Virus record (IMG/VR): IMGVR_UViG_3300027754_000034
Location: 124,001-188,000 of that record
Length of the DNA: 64,000 nucleotides
Direction: 5' to 3' (one strand)
Part shown: positions 890 to 56,515 of the stretch, piece after piece
Layout of the letters: every line of letters starts with the position of its first letter
Numbering within the stretch: the stretch's first letter is position 1
The notes under the pieces: generated by a model
Told to the model about the DNA's origin: nothing
Seen by the model: only the letters and a program-made list of their open reading frames with translations
Databases searched by the model: none
Position numbers and translations under genes: made by a program

Positions 890-1041
890 TTCTATATTGC
901 ACCGGTTAATTTTTTAATTTTCCTAAACCTCGATTTTTGCTGACTTGAATCGGATCAAATCAGCAGAAAATATTTGTACCTCCGTAGTGCGCTCTGTGTG
1001 GACCGTCACGGAGCTTGTGCCCTGGCATTACCTTGGGTCGG

Positions 1042-1347
1042 TCAGCTAATTCCCAAGCGGTCGGCTTCGGCTTGGGTCAAGCCCATCGAGACCATAACGA
1101 GCGACGCTTCCAACTCCCCCCGGACTGACCCGAATGCATTGAGAATGATCCGCGAACGGACGGACTGATGAAGGTCGTCGAACTTGGACCAAATGACGAA
1201 CAAGTGCGTACAACGCGGCCTCACTCGCCTAATCAATATAATGGGCTCTGGGTTGTCGGTGGGTTCTCGAAGCTCGGCTTCGAGAACCATTTGGAGTTCT
1301 GGCTCCTCGGGTAGGGGGGTATATATCAGGTGGTCTCGGACTGGCAT
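1042..1347 (-). CDS. BolA-like small protein
   Basis: VIWSKFDDL..SVRSRII..A...MGLTxxE pattern; GGAG RBS; GC-richer than flanks. Confidence 0.35.
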   Translation of the reverse strand: MPVRDHLIYTPLPEEPELQMVLEAELREPTDNPEPIILIRRVRPRCTHLFVIWSKFDDLHQSVRSRIILNAFGSVRGELEASLVMVSMGLTQAEADRLGIS

Positions 1348-1446
1348 TTTTATGTCTCCGGTTGTGGTGGCATCATCAAAAGCGGTATGCCATTGAAGTT
1401 TTCTACTTACATGTCTGCATGGACATGATTTTAAAAAAATACATTC

Positions 1447-1872
1447 CTAATGCAATTTGACTACTTCTACTGGTGTTCCCCATATATCTCTTCCTGTGTC
1501 TCCGCTTATAACAAGGCAGTCAAACCCTAACTTTTTAAGCTCAGGCAGAGACTCTTCTATTACTAAAGCTATATCACCCATCACTTCTAGCGGTTTACTC
1601 AGCGATTCTATGAATTCCAGATGATTTGGATTATCTAAATCCAGGAACGCAATTTTCGAACAATTGGGGAGTTTATGTTCCTCAGGAACTCCATAAAATT
1701 CTGCGCCTTCAAAATCTGTGTGATAGTAAGTCCCACTTAAAAGAGACGACGAGCTACCGCTCCTCCATAGCTTCCCGTCCCACTCCTGGTCATAAGCTTT
1801 ATAAGCTTTTTCTATTAATTGTCTTAAATTAGAAAAAGAAAAATTTGTTGGAATACTTAATTTATTTAGCAC
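1447..1872 (-). CDS. Possible ADP-ribosyltransferase-fold protein
   Basis: LWRSG...GTYYHTD...AEFYG...KLGFDCLV...EVV resembles phage ART-fold domains. Confidence 0.35.
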   Translation of the reverse strand: MLNKLSIPTNFSFSNLRQLIEKAYKAYDQEWDGKLWRSGSSSSLLSGTYYHTDFEGAEFYGVPEEHKLPNCSKIAFLDLDNPNHLEFIESLSKPLEVMGDIALVIEESLPELKKLGFDCLVISGDTGRDIWGTPVEVVKLH

Positions 1873-1932
1873 AATTTAACTCAAAATTACATGTAATTGT
1901 ACCATTCATAGTATGAACCCCGAGGCTTCGCT

Positions 1933-3234
1933 TCATGGCGCCTCGAGCGCGCGATCGATCACGGCGTCGCTCCACCTGAGCACGTGCTCGGGGTCGAAAC
2001 AGGCCGCCAGGGCTGCGGGTGTGAGAACCCGCACGACGTCGGGATCGGCCGCTAACAGCGTTTGAAACTCGCCATGCCCTTCGAACGAACGCATTGCCGA
2101 GCGTTGCACGACGACGTAGGCGTCCTGGCGCGCCATGCCCCTGCGGACGAGCTCGAGAAGCACGCCTTCGCTGTAACAGCGTCCGCCCGATAACTCGAGG
2201 TTTCGCAGCATCGTCTCCCCGTAAACGACGAGCCCTTCCGCGAGCCCTGCGGCACGCTCCAGCATGAAGCCGAGGGTTGCGATTGCGTCCGGCGCAATCA
2301 TTCTCTCGACGGACGAATGCGAGATGTCGCGCTCGTGCCAGAGGGCGACATTCTCAAGCGCCGGGATGACTGCCGCCCGCACGACACGCGCGAGGCCGCA
2401 CAGGTTTTCACTTAGGATTGGATTGCGCTTGTGAGGCATTGCGCTCGAGCCTTTTTGGCCGCAGGTGAACGCTTCCTCCGCCTCGGTGACTTCGGTGCGC
2501 TGCCAGTGTCGTACGTTCGTCGCGAGGCGCTCGATCCCTGCGGCTACGAGTGCGAGCGCGGCGAAGAAGGCTGCGTGACGGTCGCGTGCGACGACTTGGG
2601 TGGACACGGTCTCGGGGCGCAGGCCGAGGGTCTCGAGTGCTTTTGCCTCGAGTTCGGGTGAGAGGTGCGCGTAACTGCCGACCGCGCCGGCAAGCTTCCC
2701 GACTGCGATCTCGTCCCGCGCGATTCGCAGTCGATGGCGGCCCCGTTTCAGTTCGGCAAGGTGGCCTGCGAGCACCATGCCGAAACGCAGGGGTTCGGCG
2801 TGGATCCCGTGGCTGCGGCCGATGATCATCGTGTTGCGGTGCTCGTCCGTGCGCTTCGCGAGTGCGGCAATAAGGCGGTCCTGCCGCACGGCGAGGAGGT
2901 CACAGGACTGGACGAGGAGCATCGCGAAGCTCGTGTCGAGCACGTCGCTCGAGGTCATGCCGAAGTGGAGCCAGCGTGCGTCGCTTCCGGCGAGCTCTTC
3001 GACGTGCGTCAAAAATGCGATCACGTCGTGCTTCGTCGTGCGTTCGATCGCATCGATGCGCTCGGGATCGAGCTTGAGCTCTTTTGCGCGAATGTTGGCC
3101 ACGGTTCCAGCGGGGACGACGCCGGCTTCCTCCATGGCCTCACACGCGGCAAGCTCGACGGCCAACCAGGCTCGAAAACGGGTGAGCGGGGACCAAAGCT
3201 CCAGAAATTCGGCAGGAGTGTAGCGGGGGATCAT
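1933..3234 (-). CDS. purB: Adenylosuccinate lyase
   Basis: MIPRY start (ATG 3234), TKHDVIAF, HFGMTSSDV, GRSHGIHAEP, signature GSSAMPHKRNP, ERDISHSSVER; markedly GC-rich. Confidence 0.97.
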   Translation of the reverse strand: MIPRYTPAEFLELWSPLTRFRAWLAVELAACEAMEEAGVVPAGTVANIRAKELKLDPERIDAIERTTKHDVIAFLTHVEELAGSDARWLHFGMTSSDVLDTSFAMLLVQSCDLLAVRQDRLIAALAKRTDEHRNTMIIGRSHGIHAEPLRFGMVLAGHLAELKRGRHRLRIARDEIAVGKLAGAVGSYAHLSPELEAKALETLGLRPETVSTQVVARDRHAAFFAALALVAAGIERLATNVRHWQRTEVTEAEEAFTCGQKGSSAMPHKRNPILSENLCGLARVVRAAVIPALENVALWHERDISHSSVERMIAPDAIATLGFMLERAAGLAEGLVVYGETMLRNLELSGGRCYSEGVLLELVRRGMARQDAYVVVQRSAMRSFEGHGEFQTLLAADPDVVRVLTPAALAACFDPEHVLRWSDAVIDRALEAP

Positions 3235-3407
3235 GGCAGGCGGACGGTGTCCCGCTCCTTCACCGCGACGTCGTGGAACGCTTTGGCACACGCAAGCTCG
3301 GCTTCCAGCAAAACGATTTTCTCGCGTAGGGCGTCACGTTCTTCGACGGCCATAACCGTCTTGCCGCACATCCGTCGAACTAACTCTTGGATGATGTCGT
3401 AACTCAT
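3231..3407 (-). CDS. 58-aa phage-type coiled-coil protein translationally coupled to purB
   Basis: My translation MSYDIIQELVRR...AKAFHDVAVKERDTVRLP*; its TGA overlaps the purB ATG (ATGA). Confidence 0.6.
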   Translation of the reverse strand: MSYDIIQELVRRMCGKTVMAVEERDALREKIVLLEAELACAKAFHDVAVKERDTVRLP

Positions 3408-3450
3408 GGCCCTATTTTACACCGGTTAGAAGGGTCAACACCCTTCTCAA

Positions 3451-4230
3451 TCACTTTAACGCTTCCCGGCACCACGACATTAGATCGCTCCAAGATTGAT
3501 CTGGATCGCTGTCGTATTCCACGACGCGCTGTAGCGCCGCTCTTGCCTCATCAAGCTCCGCTAGCGCCTCCAATTCGCGTTTCTCGGCGGCGCGTAACGC
3601 TTCGCGCATCTTCGCCATGGCGGTACCGAACTCGCTTTTTGCCGCATACCAGTCTCGCTCGTACTCGGCGGCTTTTGCTTTCGCATCGTCGCGTTCATTT
3701 TCGGCAGCGGCGGCTCGCGCGCCAAGCTCTCGGTAGCCGTCCAGCTTTTCGTTTGCGGCGCGCTCAACCATGAATGCGTAGTTGGCCCGCGCCTCGTCGC
3801 GCTCTTTTGTTAGGCGCTGGATCTCCTCCTCGTGCGCCACATTCAGCGTGTACGTCCCGGTCGGCGCGAGGCGATGCAGTTGCTCAAGTTCTTTGTGTAA
3901 CTCGTCGCGCTCTGCCCGAGCCGCACGCGCGTCGGCGCGTAGGTTACGAATGGCGTTTTCGACGTGCATCGCCGCGTGCAGGTAGCTCGTGTCGCTCCAG
4001 CCAAACTCACTGACGAGCATATGCACCAGCGTGTCGCGCTCTGCTTTCAGCGAAACGAGTTTCACCGTCGCTTCGGCAAGACGCTTTGCCATACGACCGA
4101 CTTCGCTTTCGAGTGAGCGGACGTCGGCGAGTAGCATCAATTCGACTTCCTCACTCATCTTCGGCTCCATGCATCGCGCTCGCGAGCCGCCCTCCAGCTC
4201 GGTACGCCTCGACAGCGTGAAGCAACGCAC
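3451..4230 (-). CDS. Coiled-coil phage protein (probable start near 4158, MSEEVEL)
   Basis: Repeated ERDEARA/ERDDAKA heptads; part of the GC-rich island. Confidence 0.6.
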   Translation of the reverse strand: MRCFTLSRRTELEGGSRARCMEPKMSEEVELMLLADVRSLESEVGRMAKRLAEATVKLVSLKAERDTLVHMLVSEFGWSDTSYLHAAMHVENAIRNLRADARAARAERDELHKELEQLHRLAPTGTYTLNVAHEEEIQRLTKERDEARANYAFMVERAANEKLDGYRELGARAAAAENERDDAKAKAAEYERDWYAAKSEFGTAMAKMREALRAAEKRELEALAELDEARAALQRVVEYDSDPDQSWSDLMSWCREALK

Positions 4231-4414
4231 CGGCAGCGCGGAGCGTCTCGCCCCTCTGGCTGGTTAAAAGACACTGAGCGTCCACGATTTGGTGCAAATC
4301 GCCGCCTTCGCGATCTATCGCACGCGCCCTATTTTCTATGCGGTGTAAGTCTGCTGATGCGTCGTAATATCGCTCAGCAGCGTCGATCAGTTCTTTGATA
4401 ACGTCAGGTTCCAC
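4151..4414 (-). CDS. Hypothetical protein
   Basis: AGGAG RBS before GTG; overlaps next gene. Confidence 0.5.
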   Translation of the reverse strand: MEPDVIKELIDAAERYYDASADLHRIENRARAIDREGGDLHQIVDAQCLLTSQRGETLRAAGALLHAVEAYRAGGRLASAMHGAEDE

Positions 4415-4454
4415 TTGACCACTTCTCCTGAATCACAAATGGGTCAGGTCTCAT

Positions 4455-5216
4455 TCAATTCTTCTTCTTGGCCTTGACAGCAGTCTTCTTGATAGCCTTG
4501 GAGGTCAACTTCTTCTTGGTAGCAGACTTCTTGGTAGCAGACTTCTTGGTAGCAGACTTCTTGGTAGCAGACTTCTTGGTAGCAGGCTTCTTGGTAGCAG
4601 GCTTCTTGGTAGCCTTCATAGTTCCGGATACTTTTTTAATTTCAGCATCAGCAAGAGCACGCTCGTCAGCTTCCCGTTCCAACACATATTCAGCTTCGCT
4701 TCGGGCCATTTCACTTCCAATAGTATCCGCCCAGGCTAAAAGGTCATCTCCGCTCTCATACTCGATATGATCGTCAGACCATAACCCATCACGGCCTTTG
4801 CAAAGGCCAGCCAATTTTTGTCCGGCTTCGTGATATTCACAGAATAAAGTTAACCCTTTGTCCTTATACTTCTCATATAGTAACTCCAGACCTTTATCCG
4901 GTGGTCCCCATGCAGATTCAAAGGTGGCATAAAGCTCCCATACTTTTGACTTACCTACCGGAGGGGTTACGGTTATATCCGGCTGGATATCCCACTTGGT
5001 ACCCCAGTTCTTGGTGCACCAATTCCACCAGTCTGCGCTCCCATATTTCTTCTCTAATGATTTAGCTAACTTCTTGTTCGTATTTGGTGAAGGACTCTCT
5101 CGAAGTTCAGTAGGACAAGGAAGAATGACTTCCAGAGATAACTCAAAGTCCTCGATTTCTTGAATAATCTTCTTAGGACCAGTAAGAATCAGGCTATTTT
5201 GACACCAGTTAGGCAT
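4455..5216 (-). CDS. YubB/DUF1281-like protein with histone H1-like KK[PS]AT tail
   Basis: [29 protein letters not shown]; C-terminal Lys-rich pentamer repeats. Confidence 0.75.
4513..4615. repeat. 15-bp tandem repeat (cttcttggtagcag[a/g]) encoding KK[SP]AT
   Basis: About 6-7 consecutive units visible. Confidence 0.85.
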
Positions 5217-17859: not shown

Positions 17860-19341
17860 TTACTGCCGGGTAGGATTGAGCTGAACTACCCGACCGAAGT
17901 TCGGCTTAAAATGCCGCTTATTCGTGATAATCCACAGGCAATCCGCTCCCCTCGGCATCAGATTAATCGGGACTTCACCACAATCTCCATCGGTCAGAAT
18001 GATCACTAGATCAATCTTGTCACCAAATTTCTGCTTCGGCAGATCCTGGAAGAACTCGGTAAATACCGTGCCTCCACGACCCACCACCTGCGTACGCTCC
18101 AAAGAAGTCTTGCCGCTAACCCGAGTCGCTTTATCCCAATAGGGGACCGCATCACATGGCACGATCCAACCTTCAGCGACATCCGCCACCAATTGAAGCT
18201 CCTTCACCCCGTTCGCAATATCGTCATCCGACATTGACCCGGAGGTGTCCATCAAACAAACCCACCTAGGGAGGAAGTCGTGCTTCTTGGGTGTGTAGAG
18301 CTGATGCTTTGGGACGAATTTCCCATTCTCGTCCTTCGAGTAGATGTAGCTCGGACGACGGCGGAATCGCTTCCAGTCATTAATGTTTCCGGCATTCGCC
18401 TTCTTCTGTGCAATAGCCATTCGGATGATATCTCGTGCCGAGAGTTCTGGCTTCTTGAGTCGACCCAATGCCTGTTCGATACCCTCCGGTACCTCTCCAC
18501 GACCCATGGCACGGGTCTGGTCAGCAGCCCTCATCATATCCCCAAAGGTCTCCTCCTTGGTTTGGGAGGGAGGCATATGAGAATCGAGAGACCCCGGTCC
18601 ATCACAACAACCGGGCTTAGCCCCGCACTTCTGGCAACATTCTGGTCCCCAGGGCTGCGGGATTGTGCTCTGACCAGTCTTCGGGTCAAGAGACATGGCA
18701 CCGCAACCTCCTGCGTGCTCCTTGCAACGACGAGGGGAGTTCATTTGAGCCTTGCGGATCTGCTCGTAGATGGACTCCGGGCTTCGCCCGTAGACCGTGA
18801 CGTCTGCAAAGCATCCGGGTTGGGGGAGGTCATCCCGCGTTCCACCAATCCACTCCAAGTACATTTGGAGCGAAATCGGAGTTCCGAGCGGACCTGTCCA
18901 GATCTTCGGGAATTTCTGGTTCCGACCGGACTTCTCGTGCTCGGTCTCGATCGTGGCGTTCACCACGTAATCGACCGAGATGTTCCAGCATTGTCCGTCC
19001 AGACCACCGGCCCGTTCGGGGGAACAGTGGAAGAAGAGTACATGGTAGCTCTCGTGAGACATGACGGTCGTCACCTCTTCGGGAGACAGGGATTCCAGGA
19101 ACTCGGGGTTCCAATAGTATTCCTTACCGTTCGTGGCTGCTGTCTTGATTTCTTGTCCCCCGAGCTGCTTCGCCAGCTTATGGGGTTTAGGACCACTGAG
19201 GGCGAACAGGAAGGGATTTCCCCCTCCTGACGGCTGCCGGAACATCCTGGTTAAACATGAATTGATTTTATCCTGACAGTCCTGCAACTGTCGGGGGCTT
19301 GAGGCCACATTGTACGGATCAGCCAGTCGTGTGTATTGCAT
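17860..19341 (-). CDS. DUF2201-type metallopeptidase-VWA protein (MoxR partner)
   Basis: TAATNG, HESYH (HExxH), DYVVN, MIDAS DTSGS, GRGGT, ILTDG. Confidence 0.88.
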   Translation of the reverse strand: MQYTRLADPYNVASSPRQLQDCQDKINSCLTRMFRQPSGGGNPFLFALSGPKPHKLAKQLGGQEIKTAATNGKEYYWNPEFLESLSPEEVTTVMSHESYHVLFFHCSPERAGGLDGQCWNISVDYVVNATIETEHEKSGRNQKFPKIWTGPLGTPISLQMYLEWIGGTRDDLPQPGCFADVTVYGRSPESIYEQIRKAQMNSPRRCKEHAGGCGAMSLDPKTGQSTIPQPWGPECCQKCGAKPGCCDGPGSLDSHMPPSQTKEETFGDMMRAADQTRAMGRGEVPEGIEQALGRLKKPELSARDIIRMAIAQKKANAGNINDWKRFRRRPSYIYSKDENGKFVPKHQLYTPKKHDFLPRWVCLMDTSGSMSDDDIANGVKELQLVADVAEGWIVPCDAVPYWDKATRVSGKTSLERTQVVGRGGTVFTEFFQDLPKQKFGDKIDLVIILTDGDCGEVPINLMPRGADCLWIITNKRHFKPNFGRVVQLNPTRQ

Positions 19342-23902: not shown

Positions 23903-24556
23903 ATGAAGATTTATCCCATAGCCATCCGAATAGCTGGATTGGAGTCATACTTTGATGATATTTGCATCTATGTAGATTTAGATAATACGCTAATATGTGC
24001 CAGAGAAAAAAGTTCTCTGGATGAAGAGGATTTTAAAGAAATATCTGATTCAGGATACGAATACAAAGAAGTGGTAGCAGGGAAAAAATGGATAGTAGGG
24101 TTGAGACCTGGTGCAAAAAGTTTTCTTGAAGCAGTAGGTGAACTTGGTGAAGTCAAGCTATGTACTGCAGCCACTAAACCTTATGCGAATGCCATGCTCA
24201 GAGCATTCGAGTTAACTAGATATTTCAGCGAAATAATAAGCAGAGAGAACTTAGATTCAAACGAAATGAAAGAAAAGTACCCGTGCTCCATACTAGTGGA
24301 CGATTTACCGTCAGGTATGCCAGATATAAAGAGTAAACTAAAAGTTATGGGTATACCGTGGGATAACTCTGAATTCTATCGTAATAATCCTAATGGTGGC
24401 TTATTAGAAGAGCATAAAGCTGAAATGGCTCACCATAAAAACCACCACGTAAATGTGGCGGGTTTTTATGGTGGTATTGATGATGGCGATATTAATTTAA
24501 ATGAAGCTCTTGCAAAAGTAAAAATCGTTCTTGGTCGTATTAATAGAACGATGTAA
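23903..24556 (+). CDS. HAD-family (NIF/FCP1-like) phosphatase with N-terminal 'RIA' leader
   Basis: DLDNTLI, LRPG..FL, CTAA...YA, LVDD. Confidence 0.8.
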   Translation: MKIYPIAIRIAGLESYFDDICIYVDLDNTLICAREKSSLDEEDFKEISDSGYEYKEVVAGKKWIVGLRPGAKSFLEAVGELGEVKLCTAATKPYANAMLRAFELTRYFSEIISRENLDSNEMKEKYPCSILVDDLPSGMPDIKSKLKVMGIPWDNSEFYRNNPNGGLLEEHKAEMAHHKNHHVNVAGFYGGIDDGDINLNEALAKVKIVLGRINRTM

Positions 24557-24896: not shown

Positions 24897-25493
24897 TTGT
24901 TTTTTAACGTGAAACCTCGTGAATTATCAAATGCCCTTCGTCGTATAGCTGCAGCCATAGAGGGTTCTAAAAACCCATCTCGTAAACTTGTAACTGCGGA
25001 TTTAAAAGGGGTTATTTCACGTTTATCTTCTGATAAAATATCAAAAGATAAACTTGAAGAAATTATCAAGCAGCACGCCCTATGGGTCAAAAAAGACCCC
25101 GCAGGGGTGGAGGCGGACCTTAGCGGGATGGACCTTAGCGGGATGGACCTGGAGGGGGCTAACCTGAAGGAGGCTAACCTGAAGGAGGCTAAACTGAAGG
25201 GGGCTAACCTGAAGAGGGCTAACCTGCTTCATGCGGACCTGACCGGGGCGGACCTGACCGGGGCGGACCTGACCAAGGCGGACCTAAGCGGGGCGGACCT
25301 GGACCGGGCGTTCCTGACCGATGCGAATCTGACCGGGGCGCGGCTGGTCAATGCTAACCTGAAGGGGGCTAACCTGGACGGGACGAACGTGCACGATGCG
25401 GACTTTCGTGGGGCGAACCTGAATAATATATCCTTGGACAAAACGAAGGGCAAACCCAAAGAGGAAGGGATGCGAACCTTCGGACGGATCTAA
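24897..25493 (+). CDS. Pentapeptide-repeat protein with N-terminal 'LRRIAA' module
   Basis: ANLKE/ADLTG repeats; out-of-frame repeats continue to about 25540. Confidence 0.85.
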   Translation: MFFNVKPRELSNALRRIAAAIEGSKNPSRKLVTADLKGVISRLSSDKISKDKLEEIIKQHALWVKKDPAGVEADLSGMDLSGMDLEGANLKEANLKEAKLKGANLKRANLLHADLTGADLTGADLTKADLSGADLDRAFLTDANLTGARLVNANLKGANLDGTNVHDADFRGANLNNISLDKTKGKPKEEGMRTFGRI

Positions 25494-26813: not shown

Positions 26814-27182
26814 CTAAATCAGAAAGTATTTAGCTTTACCTTTGATACCTTCCATCCGAATTGATCCTTGACTCCGAAGTGTCCGCAACCAGGATTTAAC
26901 TTCATTCCGGTCACATCCAAGTTGGGTTATGAGGTCTCCCATCCCCACCCCAGCGGCGTGCATTTTCACAGTTTCAAGAACCGCTGACAGTCCTTGCTTG
27001 GATTTCGGAGCCTCGTGTTGTCGCTCCGTTATTAGCGGAGGTTGTGACTCGGCGCTGATGCTGGTGGAGAAGTCACCTAGAAGGTCCGCTATAGCAGATT
27101 CTACCTGGGACTGAACGATCTCGCGAACGCGCTCTTCCACGACAGCCATAAACCGATTGAACTCAAATGTTACTCTATCCAT
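26814..27182 (-). CDS. Winged-helix DNA-binding protein
   Basis: VLETVK...GMGDLITQLG.DRNEVKSWLRTL...G.I...G.K.KAKYF. Confidence 0.65.
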   Translation of the reverse strand: MDRVTFEFNRFMAVVEERVREIVQSQVESAIADLLGDFSTSISAESQPPLITERQHEAPKSKQGLSAVLETVKMHAAGVGMGDLITQLGCDRNEVKSWLRTLRSQGSIRMEGIKGKAKYFLI

Positions 27183-27283
27183 TTTTCTTCCTTTTGTGTT
27201 TCAGACATCGAACAAACGCAAACAAACTGATAATTTTCTTAGTGTTATTGGCGATACCTCTCGGTAAAACCCGAGGAACTACT

Positions 27284-27599
27284 TGGTGCGACAGGAGGGA
27301 CTTGAACCCCCGACCCGCTGATTATGCTTACCACTTCGACTTTCGCCGCCCTCTTTCGAGGTTCGTGGTCTGGACTATACCTTGCCTCTCGGCCCTAGCG
27401 TCTAGTCTCTACACCTTCCTGATAAATCAGGCTTGGCTCGGGATTGGCATGCCGGTTTCCCAGTTTAGCGTTCCCCGAATTTGCCAGGTTCTACCGGGGT
27501 GTTTCGCCCGGCAACCCTACCCATTCAAACATAGGCGTAAAACCTTTAGTCGGAATTGGTCTTAAGTCAGCTGCTACTAACCTACTGAGCTACTGTCGC
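27284..27599 (-). tRNA. tRNA with CAU anticodon (Ile2 or elongator Met), split by a group I intron
   Basis: Exon 1 27565-27599 (GCGACAG...GCTGA-CT), exon 2 27284-27326 (CAT-AA-TCAGC...GTTCAAGT...CTGTCGC-A-CCA). Confidence 0.9.
27327..27564 (-). mobile_element. Group I (IC3-like) self-splicing intron, 238 nt, ORF-less
   Basis: P AAATTCGGGGAA, Q AATCCCGAGC, R GTAGAGACTAGACG, S AAGGTATAGTCC; 5' exon ends in U33, intron ends in G. Confidence 0.92.
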
Positions 27600-27741
27600 A
27601 TGAATTATTGTAAGTGCGGAACTTAATCCCTCGCCAAGCTATGCGGCAAAACGAGAGATCCTCTCAATCGAACCCGGATGCCTTATTATCTTCCTTTCGG
27701 TGAAAGAAATTACATCAAACTTAATAACAGTCTCTCACCAG

Positions 27742-27814
27742 AGCGGGATGACGGGTTCGAACCGACGACATGGAGGTTGGAAACCTCCTGCTCTACCAAC
27801 TGAGCTAATCCCGC
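27742..27814 (-). tRNA. tRNA-Gly(UCC)
   Basis: GCGGGAT acceptor, GGAGG-TTTCCAA-CCTCC arm. Confidence 0.92.
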
Positions 27815-27890: not shown

Positions 27891-27966
27891 TGGTGGCCAT
27901 GGTGGGACTCGAACCCACACTTTATCGATTTTAAGTCGATTGCCTCTGCCTTTGGGCTACATGGCC
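27891..27966 (-). tRNA. tRNA-Leu(UAA) with short variable loop
   Basis: GGCCATG acceptor, ATCGA-CTTAAAA-TCGAT, 5-nt variable region, encoded CCA. Confidence 0.88.
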
Positions 27967-29319: not shown

Positions 29320-29498
29320 ACCCTTTATATTTCACCATCATCATCTTCGATTACATAATCGTGATGGGTTAGTTTTATTTTATTCTTGGTGCGTTCTAAA
29401 TCTAAAAGATATAAAGTATATTCTAATGCAGACACTTCTGTTTTTCTCTCTTCTAAGTATTTTCTAACCCTTCCCTCATCCCAGTATTTCATTTCCGG

Positions 29499-29571
29499 CA
29501 CCCCGTACGGGACTTGAACCCATTTACATGATTTGAAAGGACGCTGGCCTGACCGGGTAGTCTAACGGGGT
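29499..29571 (-). pseudogene. Degenerate tRNA-Glu(UUC)
   Basis: Acceptor ACCCCGT/ACGGGGT and T arm intact; anticodon stem GCGTC/ATCAT mostly unpaired. Confidence 0.7.
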
Positions 29572-30348: not shown

Positions 30349-31044
30349 TTACTTCATCAAATCATCGGAAATAATATTCAATTTGTTAATAATATCTGGA
30401 GATTTCTCTTGCAGCAGGGGAATTAAGATATTGCGAACCCACACCCTAAGAAATTCTTCATTATTATTAGAAGGATCTTCTGCACATGTCAGATCCCATC
30501 GTTTAGCATATCCCAGGATATCTTGCTTACTTGCCTTCAAGAGGGGTCGAAATAAGGCCAAATGAGTATCCCGCACAGGGATGTATTGGATTTCCGGAAG
30601 AACCGCTAAACTTCCAGCAGAAGTCGCTCGCATCATTCGAATGAGAACAGTTTCTGCTCTATCATCTCGATGATGGGCAGTTACCAGATTCGCCCCAATT
30701 TCATATGCCTTATTCCACAAGGCACAATAACGACCTTCTCGAGCTCGGGCTTGTAAATTGCCACCCTTCTCGATAGTGATTCTTTCTCGAATGAACGGGA
30801 TGGACTCATGTCGGCAAAGCGATTCTGCTGAATCCAGTTCAGAATCCGCCTCCGGTCGGAGTCCATGATTCACACCCATGGCCCATATACGGTGTCCCTG
30901 GGCTTTCGCGACGTGAGAAAAGCCCTTGATTAACACTTGACTATCTGAGCCGCCAGAGACGGCCAAGAGAAAGCGGAAAGGGCCATCGAAGTGCCTCTTC
31001 AGAGCAGCTTCAATTTCCTGATTGATGATGGCCCTCCCGCTCAT
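30349..31044 (-). CDS. tilS: tRNA(Ile)-lysidine synthetase (catalytic domain only)
   Basis: AVSGGSDS PP-loop, VNHGLR, AREGRY, TAHHRDDRAET, RPLL, EDPSN, R..VRN. Confidence 0.92.
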   Translation of the reverse strand: MSGRAIINQEIEAALKRHFDGPFRFLLAVSGGSDSQVLIKGFSHVAKAQGHRIWAMGVNHGLRPEADSELDSAESLCRHESIPFIRERITIEKGGNLQARAREGRYCALWNKAYEIGANLVTAHHRDDRAETVLIRMMRATSAGSLAVLPEIQYIPVRDTHLALFRPLLKASKQDILGYAKRWDLTCAEDPSNNNEEFLRVWVRNILIPLLQEKSPDIINKLNIISDDLMK

Positions 31045-36624: not shown

Positions 36625-36690
36625 TGTATTTGATACAATATATCAGCATGCCGTGTCAAATATGTGCTATATATTTGACACGGCATTCGG

Positions 36691-36775
36691 CGGAAGAAGA
36701 GGGATTCGAACCCACGGTGGGTTTCCCCACGGCTGATTAGTAATCAGCTGCCTTAAACCACTCGGCCATTCTTCC
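36691..36775 (-). tRNA. tRNA-Ser with rare ACU anticodon
   Basis: GGAAGAA acceptor, GCTGA-TTACTAA-TCAGC, long variable arm GTGGG-GAAA-CCCAC, G73. Confidence 0.9.
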
Positions 36776-40120: not shown

Positions 40121-40528
40121 TCAAGTCATTTGTTCCAACATATCTTGAGCCTTATCGGACATCTCACCTTTACCTTTACCTTTACCTTTTTTCTGGTCTC
40201 TACGGTTTACCTTTTTTAGCTCTTTCTTTTCCTGGTTCACTTGAGTAGTAGTCATTACCGTATTTTGGCTAGGTCGAGCCATATTTTTACATAACGGACA
40301 ATATACACCAGAAGTCTTCACGGTATCCAGGTACACTTGGAAATCAGCGTTACATTTTTCACATTTATAATCCCACAATTTCATAGCAAGTCTTTTTGAC
40401 GTCGCATTCCTAAAATTGTAAGTTTTACCAAGTAACTCGATAGAACGTCGAAATTCATCCATACAAAGGCTCACCATTAAGGGTGTAACCTTCCGAATGG
40501 ATTTAACCGAACACTTCATTCGGACCAT
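40121..40528 (-). CDS. FmdB-like zinc-ribbon protein (true start probably MKLWDYKC)
   Basis: YKCEKC...F...CPLC. Confidence 0.5.
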   Translation of the reverse strand: MVRMKCSVKSIRKVTPLMVSLCMDEFRRSIELLGKTYNFRNATSKRLAMKLWDYKCEKCNADFQVYLDTVKTSGVYCPLCKNMARPSQNTVMTTTQVNQEKKELKKVNRRDQKKGKGKGKGEMSDKAQDMLEQMT

Positions 40529-42179
40529 TCCTGATTCACATGAGTACCAAGAACGTTTAAAATTAGAACTTTCTTGGTTTCGGGGTAGCGCGGCTGAACC
40601 TTATTTATTAACCGTCGCCCAAATATGCAGAGCAACAGTCGATATACCTCGAATTATTCGCGGATCAGCAGGTTCCAGTCTTGTCGTCTACGCCCTCGGG
40701 ATTTCAGACATTGATCCCGTTCATTGGAACATTGAGCCAGAACGGTTCTTCCATCCCCGACGACATTCTCTTCCCGATATCGATTTAGACTTCCCCGACA
40801 ATCGTCGTGACGAAGTCTTCGAACGCATCTACAATTTATTTCCCGGAAGAGCAGCTCGAATCTCTAATCATTCTCAATTTTCCGACGCCGGGTCCATTCG
40901 ACAAGCCGTTCGGTTTCTCGGTTATCGACACCATTTACCCAGTAAATTCCTTCTTTCCGACGTCGTTCCCGGTCTTGAATCTCGCGCCGTCGAAATCGCT
41001 TCAGAGTTACGACACCAAGTCTACAACATATCGCTTCATTGCGGCGGAGTCGTCGTTTTCGACCACCAGGTTCCACCACATCTTCTAACAGATTCCCCCC
41101 GACAAATTCGACTCGATAAGTTGGAAACCGAACATCATCAATTTATGAAAATCGACATTTTATCTAACATTTCGCTCACCCAACTCCACGCAATATCGGA
41201 CGCTCCCTTTTCCTCATATTCTGAAAAGGACGAACTCACATCCCGTCTCTTATCTAGCGGGCGTTCTCTCGGCATCACTCAAGCGGAGTCTCCCGCTTTC
41301 CAGAAGCTCCTTCGAGCACTTCGTCCTAATTCTCTTCCAGACGTCGTTCTCGCTATGGCTCTCATTCGTCCAGCATCCGCTTGGCGAGCCCACAGGCGCG
41401 ATTTTCTTAATCAGTGGCATCAAAATAGAAGAACTTCTCTCATGGTTTATGAGGACGACGCTACGCAGGTAATATCACGCCTCACAGGTTTACCAGGTCC
41501 TGAATCCGATGAAATTCGCCGCGCCTTTATAAATCGTCATCTGGAAATAACCAAAACATTAAGAGACAAATTAGAATTAACAGAAGAAGGTAACGGGATA
41601 ATCCAGGATATAGAGGCTTTTCGCACATTTTCAATGTGCAAGTCTCATTCAGTATCTTACGGGCGAGTTGTATGGGCACTCGCATATCATAAAGCCCACA
41701 ACCCCTCCGCTTTTTGGTTATCCACCATCAACCATGCAAAGTCCATGTGGCGTGATTGGGTGCACATTGAAGAAGCGAAACTGTCAGGACTCGACATAAA
41801 GCCGGGGAAAAAACCCTTCATCCTATCCGGTTCTACTTTATATCCTTCGGGATATACACCAACACTTTTCCTTCCGGATCCCCTTTGGGAGCTTAAAACT
41901 TACGGGATGTGGTCCGGCAATACGTTTCCAGCCGGATGTGGTCACAGTTATGATGAGACTCGAATCTCTTTCAAAGGAATAATCGGTACTTCTCGAATTT
42001 TAAAATCAAAAGATGGAGACGCCACTACATTTGTTACCATTGGGACTTCTCCCGGCGTATACCGCGATCTAATCTTAGAGGGAGCGATCGATACGACTCG
42101 CCGGAACTTTATCGAAGGTACCGGGGATTCGTATGTAACAAATGGGAGTGAATCTGTTAAAGTAACTCATTACGAGTTA

Positions 42180-42185
<6 letters not shown>
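40497..42185 (+). CDS. dnaE: Minimal C-family DNA polymerase (DnaE alpha-like, lacking PHP domain)
   Basis: [49 protein letters not shown]. Confidence 0.88.
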
Positions 42186-54991: not shown

Positions 54992-56515
54992 ATGATTGAG
55001 TTTTTAGATTCTGAATTTACTCTTAGAGAGTTTGGTTATTCAGTTCCTAAAAGATCAGATGATAAATGCTATGCCAAATGCTCACTTGGGAATCATTCTG
55101 TAATAACCACGTTAAGAGCTTTGAAGAGAACTCTTAAGAAGCGTGGGTTATATAGATGTTCTAAGTGCGTTTCTAACTCAGAAGAAGGCAAGCGACACCG
55201 ATCTTTGCAGGCCATTACTTTATGGTCTAATCCAGAAATAGCAAGTTTGATATCTGAAAAATCTAAGGAGTTAGCGAATAGCGAGAAGGGAAGAGCACAA
55301 CGTTCTCTTCAATCAAAGAAGGCGTGGGAGTCAGAACCCTATTCCAGAGTTCAAAAAGACCGAATCGCTAGTTTATTTAAGTCAGAAGAACATCGTAAAT
55401 TAGTATCTGAACGGAATAAAAAGGATTACCAAGAAAATCCTATTAAATATATTGAAGATAAAGTATCCGCGATGTGGTCGGATGCTGCAAAGAAAAAACA
55501 TAAAGAAGCTCTGGCTAGTCCCGAATATAGAGAAACTCACCGCCAGTTAGCCAAAACCAGGTTTGAAAACGATGAGTATAAAGAAAAAATAGCTAAGGGA
55601 CTAGAAAACTTTCCTCGTGGTGGGAAGATGTCCACGCCGGAAAAGCAGGTAAAAGATATTTTAGAAGCTCTTGTACTAGAGTATGTTTATAACAAGGCGG
55701 TAGGCCCTTATAACTTTGACTTCTATATCGAAAAACTTAACCTATATGTTGAGGTACAAGGTGAATATTGGCACAGTCTACCAAATAACGAAAGACGAGA
55801 TCGGGCTAAGTTTTCATACCTAAGAATGGCTTTTCCAGAAGCCAAATTAATTTATCTGTGGGATTATGATTTTAACTCCGGAAACGCTGAATATAAAATT
55901 CGAGAAGCATTAGGGTTATCCCTTAATTCAGCAATCGAGTTTAAGTTCTCAGAATGTTCATTGAGAACAGTTAATTCAACTGAGGCTAAGCCGTTTCTTA
56001 ACAGCTGGCATTACGCGCAATATGGAAAGGCTGCTAAATTTCTCTATGGTGTTTATTTAAACGAGTTATTAATATCAGTTTGCAAAATTGGTCCGGTGAG
56101 CCGTAAAGAAGTCGCTTCGTCAGAAGGATTCACTCCTAAAGAATGCTTCGAACTTGATAGGTTCTGCATTCACCCTTTTTATCATAAGAAAAACCTCGGG
56201 TCTTTTCTATTGAGCCGATCGGTAAAAACTTTCTTTAATGAATTTCCGCAATCTAAAGCATTAGTTAGCTTTTCTGATTCTACCTTCGGGCATGAGGGAA
56301 CTATTTATCGAGCTAGTAATTGGACGGAAGTCAGAAAAGTAAAACCTGATTACATTTATGTGGCTTCTGATGGATGGATTTTACATAAGAAAACCCTATA
56401 TAATCAAGCCGTTTCGGTACATATGACCGAAACGGCTTATGCTTCTAAGCATGGTTATAAAAAAGTATTCGGAAAAGAAAAAACGAAATTCATCACCAAA
56501 CGCTCATGTCGATAA
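54992..56515 (+). CDS. Fusion: helical repeats, DUF559/Vsr-like endonuclease and Mom-like (GNAT) domain
   Basis: S.PE...FDFYI...VEVQGEYWH...RD..K; FL..WHY, ELDRFC, SFLLSRS, LVSFSD...GHEGTIYRASNW. Confidence 0.78.
   Translation: MIEFLDSEFTLREFGYSVPKRSDDKCYAKCSLGNHSVITTLRALKRTLKKRGLYRCSKCVSNSEEGKRHRSLQAITLWSNPEIASLISEKSKELANSEKGRAQRSLQSKKAWESEPYSRVQKDRIASLFKSEEHRKLVSERNKKDYQENPIKYIEDKVSAMWSDAAKKKHKEALASPEYRETHRQLAKTRFENDEYKEKIAKGLENFPRGGKMSTPEKQVKDILEALVLEYVYNKAVGPYNFDFYIEKLNLYVEVQGEYWHSLPNNERRDRAKFSYLRMAFPEAKLIYLWDYDFNSGNAEYKIREALGLSLNSAIEFKFSECSLRTVNSTEAKPFLNSWHYAQYGKAAKFLYGVYLNELLISVCKIGPVSRKEVASSEGFTPKECFELDRFCIHPFYHKKNLGSFLLSRSVKTFFNEFPQSKALVSFSDSTFGHEGTIYRASNWTEVRKVKPDYIYVASDGWILHKKTLYNQAVSVHMTETAYASKHGYKKVFGKEKTKFITKRSCR

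What the first reader, a model, noticed from the sequence alone, without database searches (positions are those of the whole stretch)
27284..27599. Group IC3 intron in the anticodon loop of a phage tRNA(CAU)
Seen: a 238-nt insert between U33 and C34 with P/Q/R/S elements closely resembling the Azoarcus tRNA-Ile intron (GAAGGTGTAGAGACTAGACG, CGAGCCAAGC, ATAGTCCAG). Splicing restores CT-CAT-AA. The G1-C72 pair and lack of three G-C pairs in the anticodon stem argue against an initiator. Established: phage group I introns usually sit in protein genes, and a U33/C34 site is reported for cyanobacterial tRNA-fMet. With tilS 3 kb away, this tRNA may need both splicing and lysidination to read AUA.
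Basis: partly seen in the sequence, partly recalled or inferred. Interest (0 to 1): 0.68.

Follow-up and report, generated by a model that had tools for sequence, protein, structure and literature searches.

The report
Self-splicing intron in phage tRNA(CAU)
A freshwater jumbo phage carries a tRNA gene split by a small, probably self-splicing RNA intron just before its anticodon; once spliced, the tRNA is probably modified by the phage's own TilS enzyme so that it reads AUA, the phage's most used isoleucine codon.

Summary
On the minus strand, 27599-27284 is a tRNA gene: a 35-nt 5' exon, a 238-nt insert and a 43-nt 3' exon that ends in CCA.

**The insert is a group I intron.**
- Rfam RF00028 scores 37 bits, E 8e-8, which is below the gathering score.
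- A profile built from 19 relatives, without the window, hits only this place in the 257-kb genome (E 2e-41).
- The core helices, including the P3/P7 pseudoknot, show strong covariation across 20 homologues.
- The window agrees at 75 of 76 near-invariant columns.

**The splice site is fixed.** Only CU|CAUAA gives a U before the 5' splice site and a G at the intron's end. The anticodon is therefore CAU, not ARAGORN's UAA. The tRNA is not an initiator.

**The tRNA is probably tRNA-Ile2 (about 0.65) rather than elongator Met.**
- An N-domain-only TilS gene lies 2.75 kb away on the same strand.
- In other viral contigs such a TilS is often followed directly by a tRNA(CAU).
- AUA makes up 41% of the phage's Ile codons.

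**Novelty.** The kind is known: IC3 introns in tRNA anticodon loops, and the U33/C34 site in cyanobacterial tRNA-fMet. A phage host and an elongator CAU tRNA are not described in the papers I could search, yet more than 120 viral contigs carry such introns. No RNA evidence for splicing exists.

The parts
27284..27599 (-). Whole split tRNA(CAU) gene: 316 nt in the DNA, 78 nt after splicing, with CCA encoded
   Evidence: ARAGORN -i; sequence read. Seven-pair acceptor stem from G1-C72 to G7-C66, A73, and the T-loop GGTTCAAGTCC. The D-arm is irregular, with one extra U in its 3' strand.
27565..27599 (-). 5' exon, G1 to U33 (35 nt); it ends ...GCUGA-CU
   Evidence: U33 (27565) is the U(-1) that forms the wobble pair in P1.
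27327..27564 (-). Group I intron, 238 nt, no ORF; begins UAAGACC and ends GUGGUAAG
   Evidence: RF00028 37.1 bits; leave-one-out nhmmer E 2e-41; covariation; agreement at 75 of 76 near-invariant columns.
27284..27326 (-). 3' exon, C34 to A76 (43 nt); begins CAUAA-UCAGC. The anticodon C34 A35 U36 is at 27326-27324.
27514..27517 (-). Internal guide GGGU (intron 48-51), directly before P2. It pairs with A31-C32-U33 and intron U+1, giving the U33.G wobble. Alternative guides are GGGU at 27522-27519 and GGUU at 27545-27542.
   Evidence: Homologues all have GGGU at this place, and the pair U(-1).G is found in 20 of 20. nhmmer aligns this copy. All three alternatives keep U33.G.
27519..27563 (-). P1 extension: two hairpins, AAGACC/GGUUUU (27563-27558 with 27544-27539) and GCCUAU/AUGGGU (27536-27531 with 27524-27519)
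   Evidence: Thermodynamic fold. The region varies in length among homologues. Inferred, with no covariation support.
27492..27513 (-). P2: UGCCGGG / CCCGGUA, with a loop that holds GAAA
   Evidence: Homologues have a P2 at the same place with compensatory changes.
27483..27488 (-). P3 5' strand CCUGGC, which pairs with 27399-27394
   Evidence: helix 3: five of six pairs show changes on both sides.
27413..27479 (-). P4-P5-P5a-P6-P6a domain. P4 pairs 27478-27473 with 27443-27438; P5a is CUGG-GAAA-CCGG; P6/P6a is 27437-27413. There is no P5abc.
   Evidence: (helices 4-7, 94-100% of cells paired, 10 pairs with double changes).
27394..27412 (-). J6/7, the P7 5' strand (G156, bulged A157, G158-A162; 27409-27403), J7/3 and the P3 3' strand GCUAGG (27399-27394). 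G158 (27407) with C192 (27373) is the expected guanosine-binding pair.
   Evidence: helices 3 and 8. That this is the G-binding pair is inferred by analogy with the bulged-A P7 of other group I introns (my own knowledge).
27384..27393 (-). P8 hairpin GCC-GAGA-GGC
   Evidence: helices 9-10.
27372..27383 (-). J8/7 (AAGGUAU) and the P7 3' strand UAGUCC
   Evidence: helix 8 (100% paired).
27327..27369 (-). P9 three-way junction: P9.0 ACCAC/GUGGU, and two GAAA hairpins, CCUC-GAAA-GAGG (27361-27350) and GGC-GAAA-GUC (27347-27338). It is followed by UAAG, whose last G is the omega G at 27327.
   Evidence: helices 11-13: P9b has four of four pairs with double changes, and P9.0 is invariant..
30349..31044 (-). 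Phage TilS, catalytic N-domain only (231 aa, PP-loop SGGSDS). It is the probable partner enzyme, 2.75 kb upstream on the same strand.
   Evidence: PF01171 9e-41. TIGR02432 147.1 bits against a cut-off of 93.6. The full-length TilS model NF007942 is matched only at positions 4-209 of 439.

Best explanation
A 238-nt group I intron of the tRNA-borne IC3 type interrupts a jumbo-phage tRNA gene between U33 and C34.

**Proposed splicing mechanism.** The gene is transcribed on the minus strand together with its neighbouring tRNA genes. The intron folds into helices P1 to P9. The 5' exon end A31-C32-U33 pairs with an internal GGGU so that U33 forms the U.G wobble. Free guanosine bound in P7 attacks after U33. 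The terminal G (27327) then takes the same site, and the freed U33 3'-OH attacks before C34. The anticodon stem GCUGA/UCAGC holds the exons together, because no P10 pairing is evident.

**Product.** Splicing gives a 78-nt elongator tRNA with loop CU-CAU-AA, discriminator A73 and an encoded CCA.

**Probable next step.** I think it most likely that this tRNA is the phage's tRNA-Ile2. Only after splicing does C34 sit in an anticodon loop. The phage's own N-domain TilS (30349-31044) would then convert C34 to lysidine. This switches charging from Met to Ile and reading from AUG to AUA, the phage's commonest Ile codon.

**Shown:** the gene anatomy, the intron fold with covariation, the unique splice site, the non-initiator features, the TilS family membership, the genetic linkage and the codon usage.

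**Inferred:** that the intron splices, and that the tRNA is lysidinylated.

**Sub-confidences:** intron at U33/C34 giving CAU, 0.93; elongator and not initiator, 0.9; Ile2 rather than Met, about 0.65. The confidence given for this field (0.6) is for the whole chain, including the Ile2 step.
For: **Gene and intron**
- ARAGORN -i gives the same ends and a 238-nt insert.
- RF00028 matches over its full length with E 8e-8 and 6.7e-9.
- The leave-one-out profile gives E 2.1e-41, a single hit in 257 kb.

**Splice site**
- Of the eight possible positions, only CT|CATAA has U(-1) and a terminal G.
- U(-1).G is present in 20 of 20 homologues.
- An intron-less paralogue in an Opitutus genome has both exons abutting with no gap, reading GGACT-CATAATCC.

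**Fold**
- Of 49 pairs including the P3/P7 pseudoknot, 95.0% of cells are paired, against 30-43% when the partners are slid.
- 28 pairs show double changes, and 0 of 500 shuffles reach the observed values.
- RNAalifold independently finds 27 compensatory pairs.
- The core is intact: the window agrees at 75 of 76 near-invariant columns, and the one difference is in the P8 loop.

**Identity of the tRNA**
- It has G1-C72, and there is no GGG/CCC in the anticodon stem.
- It is the only CAU tRNA in the 257 kb.
- TilS scores over the TIGR02432 cut-off.
- In other loci fetched here with a short TilS, a tRNA(CAU) lies 2 to 900 nt away, three of them split by a group I intron: L246, L107/L366 and L367.
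- In the 80 best of 405 viral contigs with a short TilS, 17 have any tRNA within 10 kb. In 10 of those 17 (7 of 12 after merging near-identical contigs) the gene 14-65 nt downstream is tRNA(CAU). All nine proteins tested pass the TilS cut-off.
- In Halotalea alkalilenta the intact CAU tRNAs are one Met-like and two fMet-like. Its intron-split CAU tRNA, whose intron is 77% identical to ours in the core, is therefore the only candidate for tRNA-Ile2.

**Codon usage**
- AUA is 41% of Ile codons, 29 per 1000, against 18 per 1000 for AUG.
- The other phage tRNAs (Arg UCU, Leu UAA, Gly UCC) also read the phage's most used or near most used codons.
Against: - **No RNA data.** No RNA run holds the locus, so neither splicing nor lysidine is observed.
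- **Rfam score.** It is below the gathering threshold (37 against 50 bits).
- **P1 is ambiguous.** Three possible guide sequences exist, though all keep U33.G.
- **tRNA body.** It has an irregular D-arm. It has G27-C43 and G44, where most bacterial relatives of the class have G27.U43 and U44. The variable loop GGGUC resembles that of the Met-like tRNA of Halotalea.
- **Weak discriminators.** TilS-adjacent phage tRNAs share no single feature that separates them from Met tRNAs.
- **Linkage is looser here.** TilS is 2.75 kb away, not adjacent. 63 of the 80 TilS loci have no tRNA within 10 kb, so phage TilS may also act on host tRNA.
- **Incomplete record.** It is only about 60% complete, so another CAU tRNA could lie in the missing part.
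Confidence: 0.6

Rival explanations
1. The same intron and the same splice site, but the spliced product is an ordinary elongator tRNA-Met. It keeps C34 and reads AUG. The phage TilS acts on the host's tRNA-Ile2 or on a phage tRNA in the unsequenced 40%.
For: An unmodified CAU tRNA is a MetRS substrate (established knowledge). The window tRNA has G27-C43 and a GGGUC variable loop, as in the Met-like tRNA of Halotalea. 63 of the 80 phage TilS loci have no tRNA within 10 kb. The record is about 60% complete.
Against: A phage gains little from extra tRNA-Met, since AUG use cannot differ much from the host's. AUA, by contrast, is its top Ile codon at 29 per 1000 and no UAU tRNA is present. Where phage TilS genes have tRNA neighbours, the neighbour is typically tRNA(CAU). 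The closest intron relatives sit in Ile2-type tRNAs.
Confidence: 0.28
2. ARAGORN's reading: a tRNA-Leu(UAA) whose intron lies after the anticodon (loop CUUAAAA).
For: ARAGORN -i prints tRNA-Leu (taa) i(39,238). The program simply assumes an intron position on the 3' side of the anticodon.
Against: That junction would put an A before the 5' splice site and a U at the intron's end, against the U/G rule met by 98.5% of mapped bacterial tRNA introns. The homologues align CT|...G|CATAAT in all 20 sequences. The body has a 5-nt variable loop, and an intact tRNA(UAA) already lies 300 nt away.
Confidence: 0.01
3. A decayed intron that no longer splices, so the tRNA gene is dead.
For: The Rfam score is below gathering. 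The D-arm is irregular. The L2 loop is not a clean GAAA tetraloop.
Against: The window agrees at 75 of 76 near-invariant core columns. All helices pair in the window row. A relative about 96% identical in another lake sample keeps the intron, and the one listed difference falls in the P8 loop. Rfam's seed holds no bacterial introns, so low scores are expected.
Confidence: 0.05
4. An initiator tRNA-fMet with the classical cyanobacterial fMet intron.
For: The insertion site is the same (U33/C34) and so is the anticodon.
Against: The tRNA has a G1-C72 Watson-Crick pair, and its anticodon stem is GCUGA/UCAGC without three G-C pairs. The fMet-like tRNAs retrieved here have a mismatched first pair and GGG or AGG before, and CCC or CCU after, the anticodon loop.
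Confidence: 0.02

Closest known systems
Cyanobacterial tRNA-fMet group I intron (class fMet.2Ug)
   Same: Both are IC3-type introns in the anticodon loop at exactly the same place, CU/CAUAA between U33 and C34, with U(-1) and a terminal G.
   Different: The host tRNA here is an elongator (G1-C72, no three G-C pairs), the genome is a phage, and there is no ORF. Some fMet introns carry a homing endonuclease (reference list of PMC3984707).
Azoarcus tRNA-Ile(CAU) intron (class Ile2.5Ug)
   Same: A small IC3 ribozyme of about 200 nt in a CAU tRNA that is read as Ile2. Phage versions of this class lie directly downstream of phage tilS (L107/L366 and L367).
   Different: That intron sits after U36 (CUCAU/AA), so its P1 uses the anticodon itself. 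Ours sits before C34. I made no direct sequence comparison with Azoarcus, because no tool gave me that sequence.
tRNA-Leu(UAA) intron of cyanobacteria and plastids (Leu.3Ug)
   Same: The core 20-mer is identical, and the P9 end ...AGUGGUAAG is the same. Most of the 90 viral split tRNAs found with the 20-mer are of this class.
   Different: It is inserted between U34 and A35 of a Leu tRNA.
Elongator CAU tRNAs split at U33/C34 in bacteria (Comamonas testosteroni, Halotalea alkalilenta, Opitutaceae, Accumulibacter, Casimicrobiaceae)
   Same: Same site, same 3' end and same fold. Core identity to the window is 63-78%, with Comamonas and Halotalea closest at 77-78%. In Halotalea the tRNA is Ile2 by exclusion.
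   Different: These are bacterial chromosomes. Their exons are of the GGGCC... type with G27.U43. I could not see whether this class is among the 17 new classes of the 2020 preprint, because its table is an image.
Phage group I introns in protein genes (T4 td, nrdB and others)
   Same: [quoted passage not shown]
   Different: They sit in protein-coding genes, often carry homing endonucleases, and are mostly subtype IA2 (PMC11835236; PMC3984707).
TilS of Pseudomonas jumbo phages PA5oct and MIJ3
   Same: A short (about 200 aa) phage TilS in a jumbo phage, with a tRNA(CAU) gene in the tRNA cluster 7 kb away. Its function was stated as unknown in PMC6892783.
   Different: It is only 29% identical, and the PA5oct tRNA is not split.

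Membership tests
Group I intron | Significant match to the Rfam RF00028 covariance model | tested here: inconclusive
   37.1 bits over model positions 1-253, with E 8e-8 and 6.7e-9, but below the gathering score of 50. The Rfam seed holds no bacterial introns, and the 2020 preprint used thresholds of 18-20 bits.
Group I intron | Conserved core helices P3-P9 with the P3/P7 pseudoknot | tested here: met
   49 pairs, 95% of cells paired, 28 pairs with double changes, 0 of 500 shuffles reach the observed values, and slid controls give 30-43%.
Group I intron | U(-1) in a U.G wobble pair in P1 at the 5' splice site | tested here: met
   U33 pairs with a G of the internal GGGU. The pair is U.G in 20 of 20 homologues.
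Group I intron | Terminal guanosine (omega G) before the 3' splice site | tested here: met
   G at 27327. The column is invariant in the alignment.
Group I intron | Guanosine-dependent self-splicing | not testable with these tools
   No RNA run holds the locus.
IC3 subgroup (tRNA introns) | No P5abc extension; a compact intron of about 200-250 nt | tested here: met
   P5 carries only a 4-bp P5a hairpin, and the intron is 238 nt. IC3 lacks P5(a-d) according to PMC11835236.
IC3 subgroup (tRNA introns) | Sequence kinship with classical tRNA anticodon-loop introns | tested here: met
   It shares the 20-nt core and the P9 end with viral tRNA-Leu(UAA) U34/A35 introns. A direct comparison with the Azoarcus and Anabaena reference sequences was not made.
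fMet.2Ug class | Insertion between U33 and C34 of a CAU anticodon loop | tested here: met
fMet.2Ug class | The host gene is an initiator tRNA (mismatched 1-72 pair, three G-C pairs closing the anticodon stem) | tested here: not met
   G1-C72 and stem GCUGA/UCAGC. It is therefore not filed as fMet.2Ug, but as an elongator CAU tRNA split at the same site.
tRNA-Ile2 (lysidine tRNA) | Anticodon CAU with A37, A38 and discriminator A73 | tested here: met
   Read from the exons. tRNA-Met shares these features, so they do not discriminate.
tRNA-Ile2 (lysidine tRNA) | Scores as Ile2 and not Met with isotype-specific models | not tested
Feature comparison was inconclusive.
tRNA-Ile2 (lysidine tRNA) | C34 converted to lysidine; charged by IleRS | not testable with these tools
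   Needs mass spectrometry and aminoacylation assays.
TilS | N-terminal PP-loop catalytic domain over the curated cut-off | tested here: met
   TIGR02432 147.1 bits against 93.6; PF01171 9e-41; SGGSDS motif.
TilS | C-terminal tRNA-binding domains of the full-length enzyme | tested here: not met
   The protein is 231 aa, and NF007942 matches only positions 4-209 of 439. It is an N-domain-only variant, as in 405 other viral contigs.

The most novel reading that the evidence does not exclude
The intron is not a neutral passenger. It may be part of a phage AUA-decoding cassette made of an N-domain TilS and a split tRNA-Ile2. The intron sits directly 5' of C34. The precursor would therefore have no anticodon loop and would be invisible to MetRS, TilS and host anticodon nucleases until the ribozyme splices. 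Splicing would then set when the phage's commonest Ile codon becomes readable. More broadly, IC3 introns would be a common, so far unrecorded feature of phage tRNA genes, contrary to the review statement that phage introns sit only in protein genes.
Probability: 0.15. Interest if true: 0.75.

Novelty: new member of a known kind. Interest (0 to 1): 0.55.

Why it matters
**Phage introns in tRNA genes.** The 2014 review still cited for bacterial group I introns states that every phage intron known then lay in a protein gene, despite the many phage tRNA genes. This locus is a clear counter-example, and so are the more than 120 viral contigs found with its core, along with an isolate, Gordonia phage Daredevil. 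tRNA finders miss or mislabel such genes: the default ARAGORN run missed this one, and the intron mode called it Leu. Phage tRNA repertoires are therefore under-counted.

**A role for phage TilS.** The locus also suggests a concrete role for phage-encoded TilS, which the literature I found leaves without one. Together with a phage tRNA(CAU), it would supply AUA decoding to an AT-rich phage whose top Ile codon is AUA. That idea can be tested with two small RNAs and one 231-aa protein.

Tried and rejected
- **RNA evidence.** No RNA run holds the locus.
- **Reads.** Laying contigs from four DNA runs showed the source contig, plus a relative about 96% identical that also carries the intron. No intron-less allele appeared. 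The listed 'joints' between 27315-27324 and 27787-27790 come from other organisms' tRNA genes that share T-arm sequence, so they are not splicing.
- **Exon search.** An exact search for the 3' exon in viral contigs found nothing.
- **TilS searches.** The TilS protein alone found no close viral relatives. A seven-protein alignment was too diverse to search with. A three-protein alignment worked.
- **Pattern noise.** The 15-nt junction pattern mostly gave chance hits in both collections. Only 27 of the 235 matching places passed the split-tRNA filter.
- **Covariance model.** I used a leave-one-out nhmmer profile instead.
- **Promoters and terminators.** The scan was at or below the shuffled expectation.
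- **Plus-strand ORFs.** The ORFs across the locus (27167-27565 and 27444-27626) and the small neighbouring ORFs have no Pfam match, so I take the plus-strand ORFs as spurious.
- **Met versus Ile2 by features.** Comparing 27-43, 30-40, position 44 and the acceptor stem did not separate the two. TilS-adjacent phage tRNAs are too diverse.
- **Halotalea.** Two extra pattern hits there are not tRNAs.
- **Literature.** Paquin et al. 1997 (PMC179611) is not held. Seven of the ten literature searches looked for a description of group I introns in phage tRNA genes and found none.
- The exons were compared one by one.
Full report
**What is there**

On the minus strand, 27599-27284 reads as a tRNA gene in two pieces.
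- The 35-nt 5' piece has a seven-pair acceptor strand, a D-arm and the 5' anticodon-stem strand GCUGA, followed by CU.
- The 43-nt 3' piece starts CAUAA, then has UCAGC, a five-base variable loop, a normal T-arm, the acceptor strand, A73 and CCA.
- Between them lie 238 nt.

ARAGORN in default mode misses the gene. With its intron option it finds exactly these ends and a 238-nt insert. The window is positions 124001-188000 of a 257-kb IMG/VR virus record that CheckV rates as about 60% complete. It encodes tail-fibre proteins, a DNA polymerase, a ligase and a thymidylate synthase, so calling it a jumbo phage is justified. The source sample is a freshwater metagenome.

**Is the insert a group I intron?**

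Several independent lines say yes.
- **Rfam.** The general model RF00028 aligns over its whole length with 37.1 bits. That gives E 8e-8 in the local search and 6.7e-9 in the genome. It is below the gathering score of 50, so the default scan was silent. This is expected: the author of the 2020 preprint on bacterial tRNA introns notes that none of the Rfam seed sequences was bacterial, and he worked with thresholds of 18-20 bits.
- **Relatives.** The core 20-mer occurs in more than 120 viral contigs. In 90 of the 121 stretches examined (the window's own included) ARAGORN sees tRNA halves around it. A junction pattern then brought in further homologues split at the same site as the window. About 16 are viral and nine bacterial: Comamonas testosteroni, Halotalea alkalilenta, three Opitutaceae, Accumulibacter, Casimicrobiaceae, a Planctomycetia MAG and a proteobacterial MAG.
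- **Leave-one-out profile.** A profile built from 19 of these, without the window, finds one place in the 257 kb. It is window 27567-27320, with E 2.1e-41, and spans from exon A31 to exon CATAATC.
- **Covariation.** I wrote out a structure on the 20-sequence alignment with the anticodon stem, P1, P3, P4, P5, P6/P6a, P7, P8 and the P9 three-way junction, and with P3 and P7 as a pseudoknot. In it, 95.0% of cells pair, against 30-43% when the partners are slid by one to three columns. 28 of 49 pairs show changes on both sides, and none of 500 shuffles reaches any of the five measures. RNAalifold independently predicts the nested helices, with 27 compensatory pairs.
- **Intact core.** The window agrees with its relatives at 75 of the 76 columns where at least 18 of 19 agree. 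The single difference is in the P8 loop, so the core shows no sign of decay.
- **Fold energy.** The MFE is -82.4 kcal/mol, z -2.93.

**Where are the splice sites?**

A seven-base loop can be made in eight ways from the two ends. Only CU|...G|CAUAA puts a U before the 5' site and a G at the intron's end. The preprint reports that 98.5% of mapped bacterial tRNA introns obey this rule, and gives 40% as the chance of meeting it at one of the eight positions at random.

ARAGORN's own placement gives anticodon UAA ('Leu'). It would need an A at -1 and a U at the end, so I reject it.

In all 20 homologues U(-1) faces a G of a conserved GGGU. In the window three guide sequences are possible:
- GGGU directly before P2 (27517-27514), favoured by homology and by the nhmmer alignment;
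- GGGU at 27522-27519;
- GGUU at 27545-27542.

All three keep the U33.G wobble. The P1 model is therefore uncertain in detail, but the splice site is not.

An Opitutus genome holds both an intron-split copy and intron-less copies of nearly the same tRNA. Matching the two exons separately, they abut with no gap in the intact copy and read GGACT-CATAATCC. This shows the DNA-level insertion point for the class. I found no intron-less allele of the window's own tRNA.

**Which tRNA is it?**

It is not an initiator. Positions 1-72 form a G-C pair, and the anticodon stem is GCUGA/UCAGC. The fMet-like tRNAs fetched from five bacterial genomes have a mismatched first pair and GGG or AGG before, and CCC or CCU after, the loop.

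Sequence features did not separate elongator Met from Ile2. Context favours Ile2.
- **A TilS gene nearby.** An ORF 2.75 kb upstream on the same strand (30349-31044) is a TilS catalytic domain. TIGR02432 scores 147 bits against a cut-off of 93.6, and the PP-loop reads SGGSDS. The C-terminal tRNA-binding domains are absent.
- **The only CAU tRNA.** The split tRNA is the only CAU tRNA in the 257 kb, and there is no UAU tRNA.
- **Recurrent pairing of short TilS with tRNA(CAU).** Among loci already fetched for other reasons, seven plus phage PA5oct carry a short TilS (an eighth locus gave only a partial match).
  - All eight have a tRNA(CAU) within 7 kb. It lies 2 nt away in L094, about 110 nt in L107, 218 nt in L246, about 440 nt in L010 and about 800 nt in L091.
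  - In L107, L246 and L159 that tRNA is itself split by a group I intron.
  - A search with a three-protein alignment found 405 viral contigs with such a TilS. Of the best 80, 17 have any tRNA within 10 kb. In 10 of those (7 of 12 after merging near-identical contigs) the gene 14-65 nt downstream of tilS is a tRNA(CAU), two of them with an intron after U36.
  - All nine proteins tested pass the TilS cut-off.
- **Halotalea by exclusion.** In Halotalea alkalilenta the only intact CAU tRNAs are one Met-like and two fMet-like. Its split CAU tRNA is therefore the sole candidate for the essential tRNA-Ile2. Its intron is among the two closest to the window's, at 77% core identity.
- **Codon usage.** In 234 long ORFs covering 86.5% of the genome, AUA is the commonest Ile codon: 41%, or 29 per 1000 codons, against 18 per 1000 for AUG. 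The phage's other tRNAs read AGA (37% of Arg, the commonest), UUA (36% of Leu, the commonest) and GGA (34% of Gly, just behind GGU).

Against Ile2:
- The window tRNA has G27-C43 and G44, where most relatives have G27.U43 and U44.
- TilS is not immediately adjacent.
- Most phage TilS genes have no tRNA nearby.
- 40% of the genome is missing.

I put Ile2 at about 0.65 and elongator Met at about 0.3.

**How it most likely works**

The steps below are inferred from the anatomy.
1. The minus-strand tRNA cluster is transcribed.
2. The intron folds.
3. Guanosine attacks after U33.
4. The terminal G at 27327 swaps into the P7 site.
5. U33 is joined to C34, with the exons aligned by the anticodon stem. 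I see no P10 pairing, and the Anabaena tRNA intron is reported to need the anticodon stem (title cited in PMC3984707).
6. Only the spliced molecule offers C34 in a loop.
7. TilS then makes lysidine, and IleRS charges the tRNA.

**Comparison with what is known**

The preprint lists four classical tRNA intron classes, all IC3: Leu.3Ug, Arg.5Ug, fMet.2Ug and Ile2.5Ug. It adds 17 more from bacterial genomes, but its table is an image, so I cannot tell whether an elongator CAU class at position 2 is among them.

The window's intron shares its site with fMet.2Ug but fails the initiator test. It probably shares its tRNA kind with Ile2.5Ug, but not the site. It lacks P5abc, as IC3 introns do.

The 2014 review says all phage introns then known were in protein genes. 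A 2025 database paper finds viral group I introns to be mostly IA2. None of my searches for it found a paper describing a group I intron in a phage tRNA gene.

Phage TilS was first noted in MIJ3 and PA5oct in 2019, with its function left open.

**Verdict**

This is a real, well-formed member of a known kind of ribozyme in an unrecorded setting, and it is one of many such cases in viral metagenomes. The link to TilS is plausible, statistically supported across loci and testable, but it is not shown.

**Limits**
- There is no RNA evidence.
- The P1 extension and P2 loop rest on thermodynamic folding only.
- The MAFFT alignment is imperfect in P2 and P3 for one subgroup, which lowers the P3 pairing to 76%.
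- Codon counts come from a crude ORF set.
Exons were handled one by one.

Noticed in passing
window 27891-27966 (-): A tRNA with anticodon UAA (Leu) is only 76 nt long and has no long variable arm. It is a class I body with a leucine anticodon. It scores 67 bits with the Rfam tRNA model.
   Followed up: no
window 29497-29571 (-): A tRNA-like gene has anticodon UCA, which would read UGA. ARAGORN calls it 'SeC', and Rfam gives 30.5 bits, just over the gathering score of 29. Yet TGA is the commonest stop of long ORFs (115 of 234). Reading TGA as sense raises ORF coverage only from 86.5% to 89.4%. I see no case for another genetic code.
   Followed up: partly
window 36689-36775 (-): An 87-nt 'tRNA-Ser' has anticodon ACU. 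An unmodified A34 is unusual.
   Followed up: no
window 40497-42185 (+), 17860-19341 (-), 54992-56515 (+): The DNA polymerase ORF matches only profile positions 360-828 of 1190, and two large HNH or homing-endonuclease ORFs lie in the window. The polymerase may be a split gene. RF00028 finds no second group I intron in the 257 kb at E up to 1.
   Followed up: no
L048 / L445 (Gordonia phage Daredevil NC_048021.1, about 41.8-42.0 kb): A cultured phage carries the same intron core inside a split tRNA-Lys(UUU), with a 238-nt intron at CUU|UUAA. It lies in an unannotated gap next to the integrase gene.
   Followed up: partly
L094 (281-kb viral contig), 925-5058: ARAGORN calls three intron-split tRNA genes (Arg UCU, Leu UAA and one more) within 2 kb. 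Two near-identical tRNA(CAU) genes are also present, one ending 2 nt before a short tilS.
   Followed up: partly
L246 (Planctomycetia MAG contig), 2814-4330: A 341-aa TilS gene lies 218 nt downstream of a CAU tRNA split at U33/C34. The contig is only 8.5 kb, so it may be a mis-binned mobile element.
   Followed up: partly
viral contigs L366-L444: At least 405 IMG/VR contigs encode an N-domain-only TilS of about 195-230 aa. Most of the best 80 have no tRNA within 10 kb, so the role of TilS there is open.
   Followed up: partly
window 24897-25493 (+) and 23903-24556 (+): A pentapeptide-repeat protein (E 3e-35) and an NIF-type phosphatase (E 2e-13) lie just downstream of the tRNA cluster.
   Followed up: no
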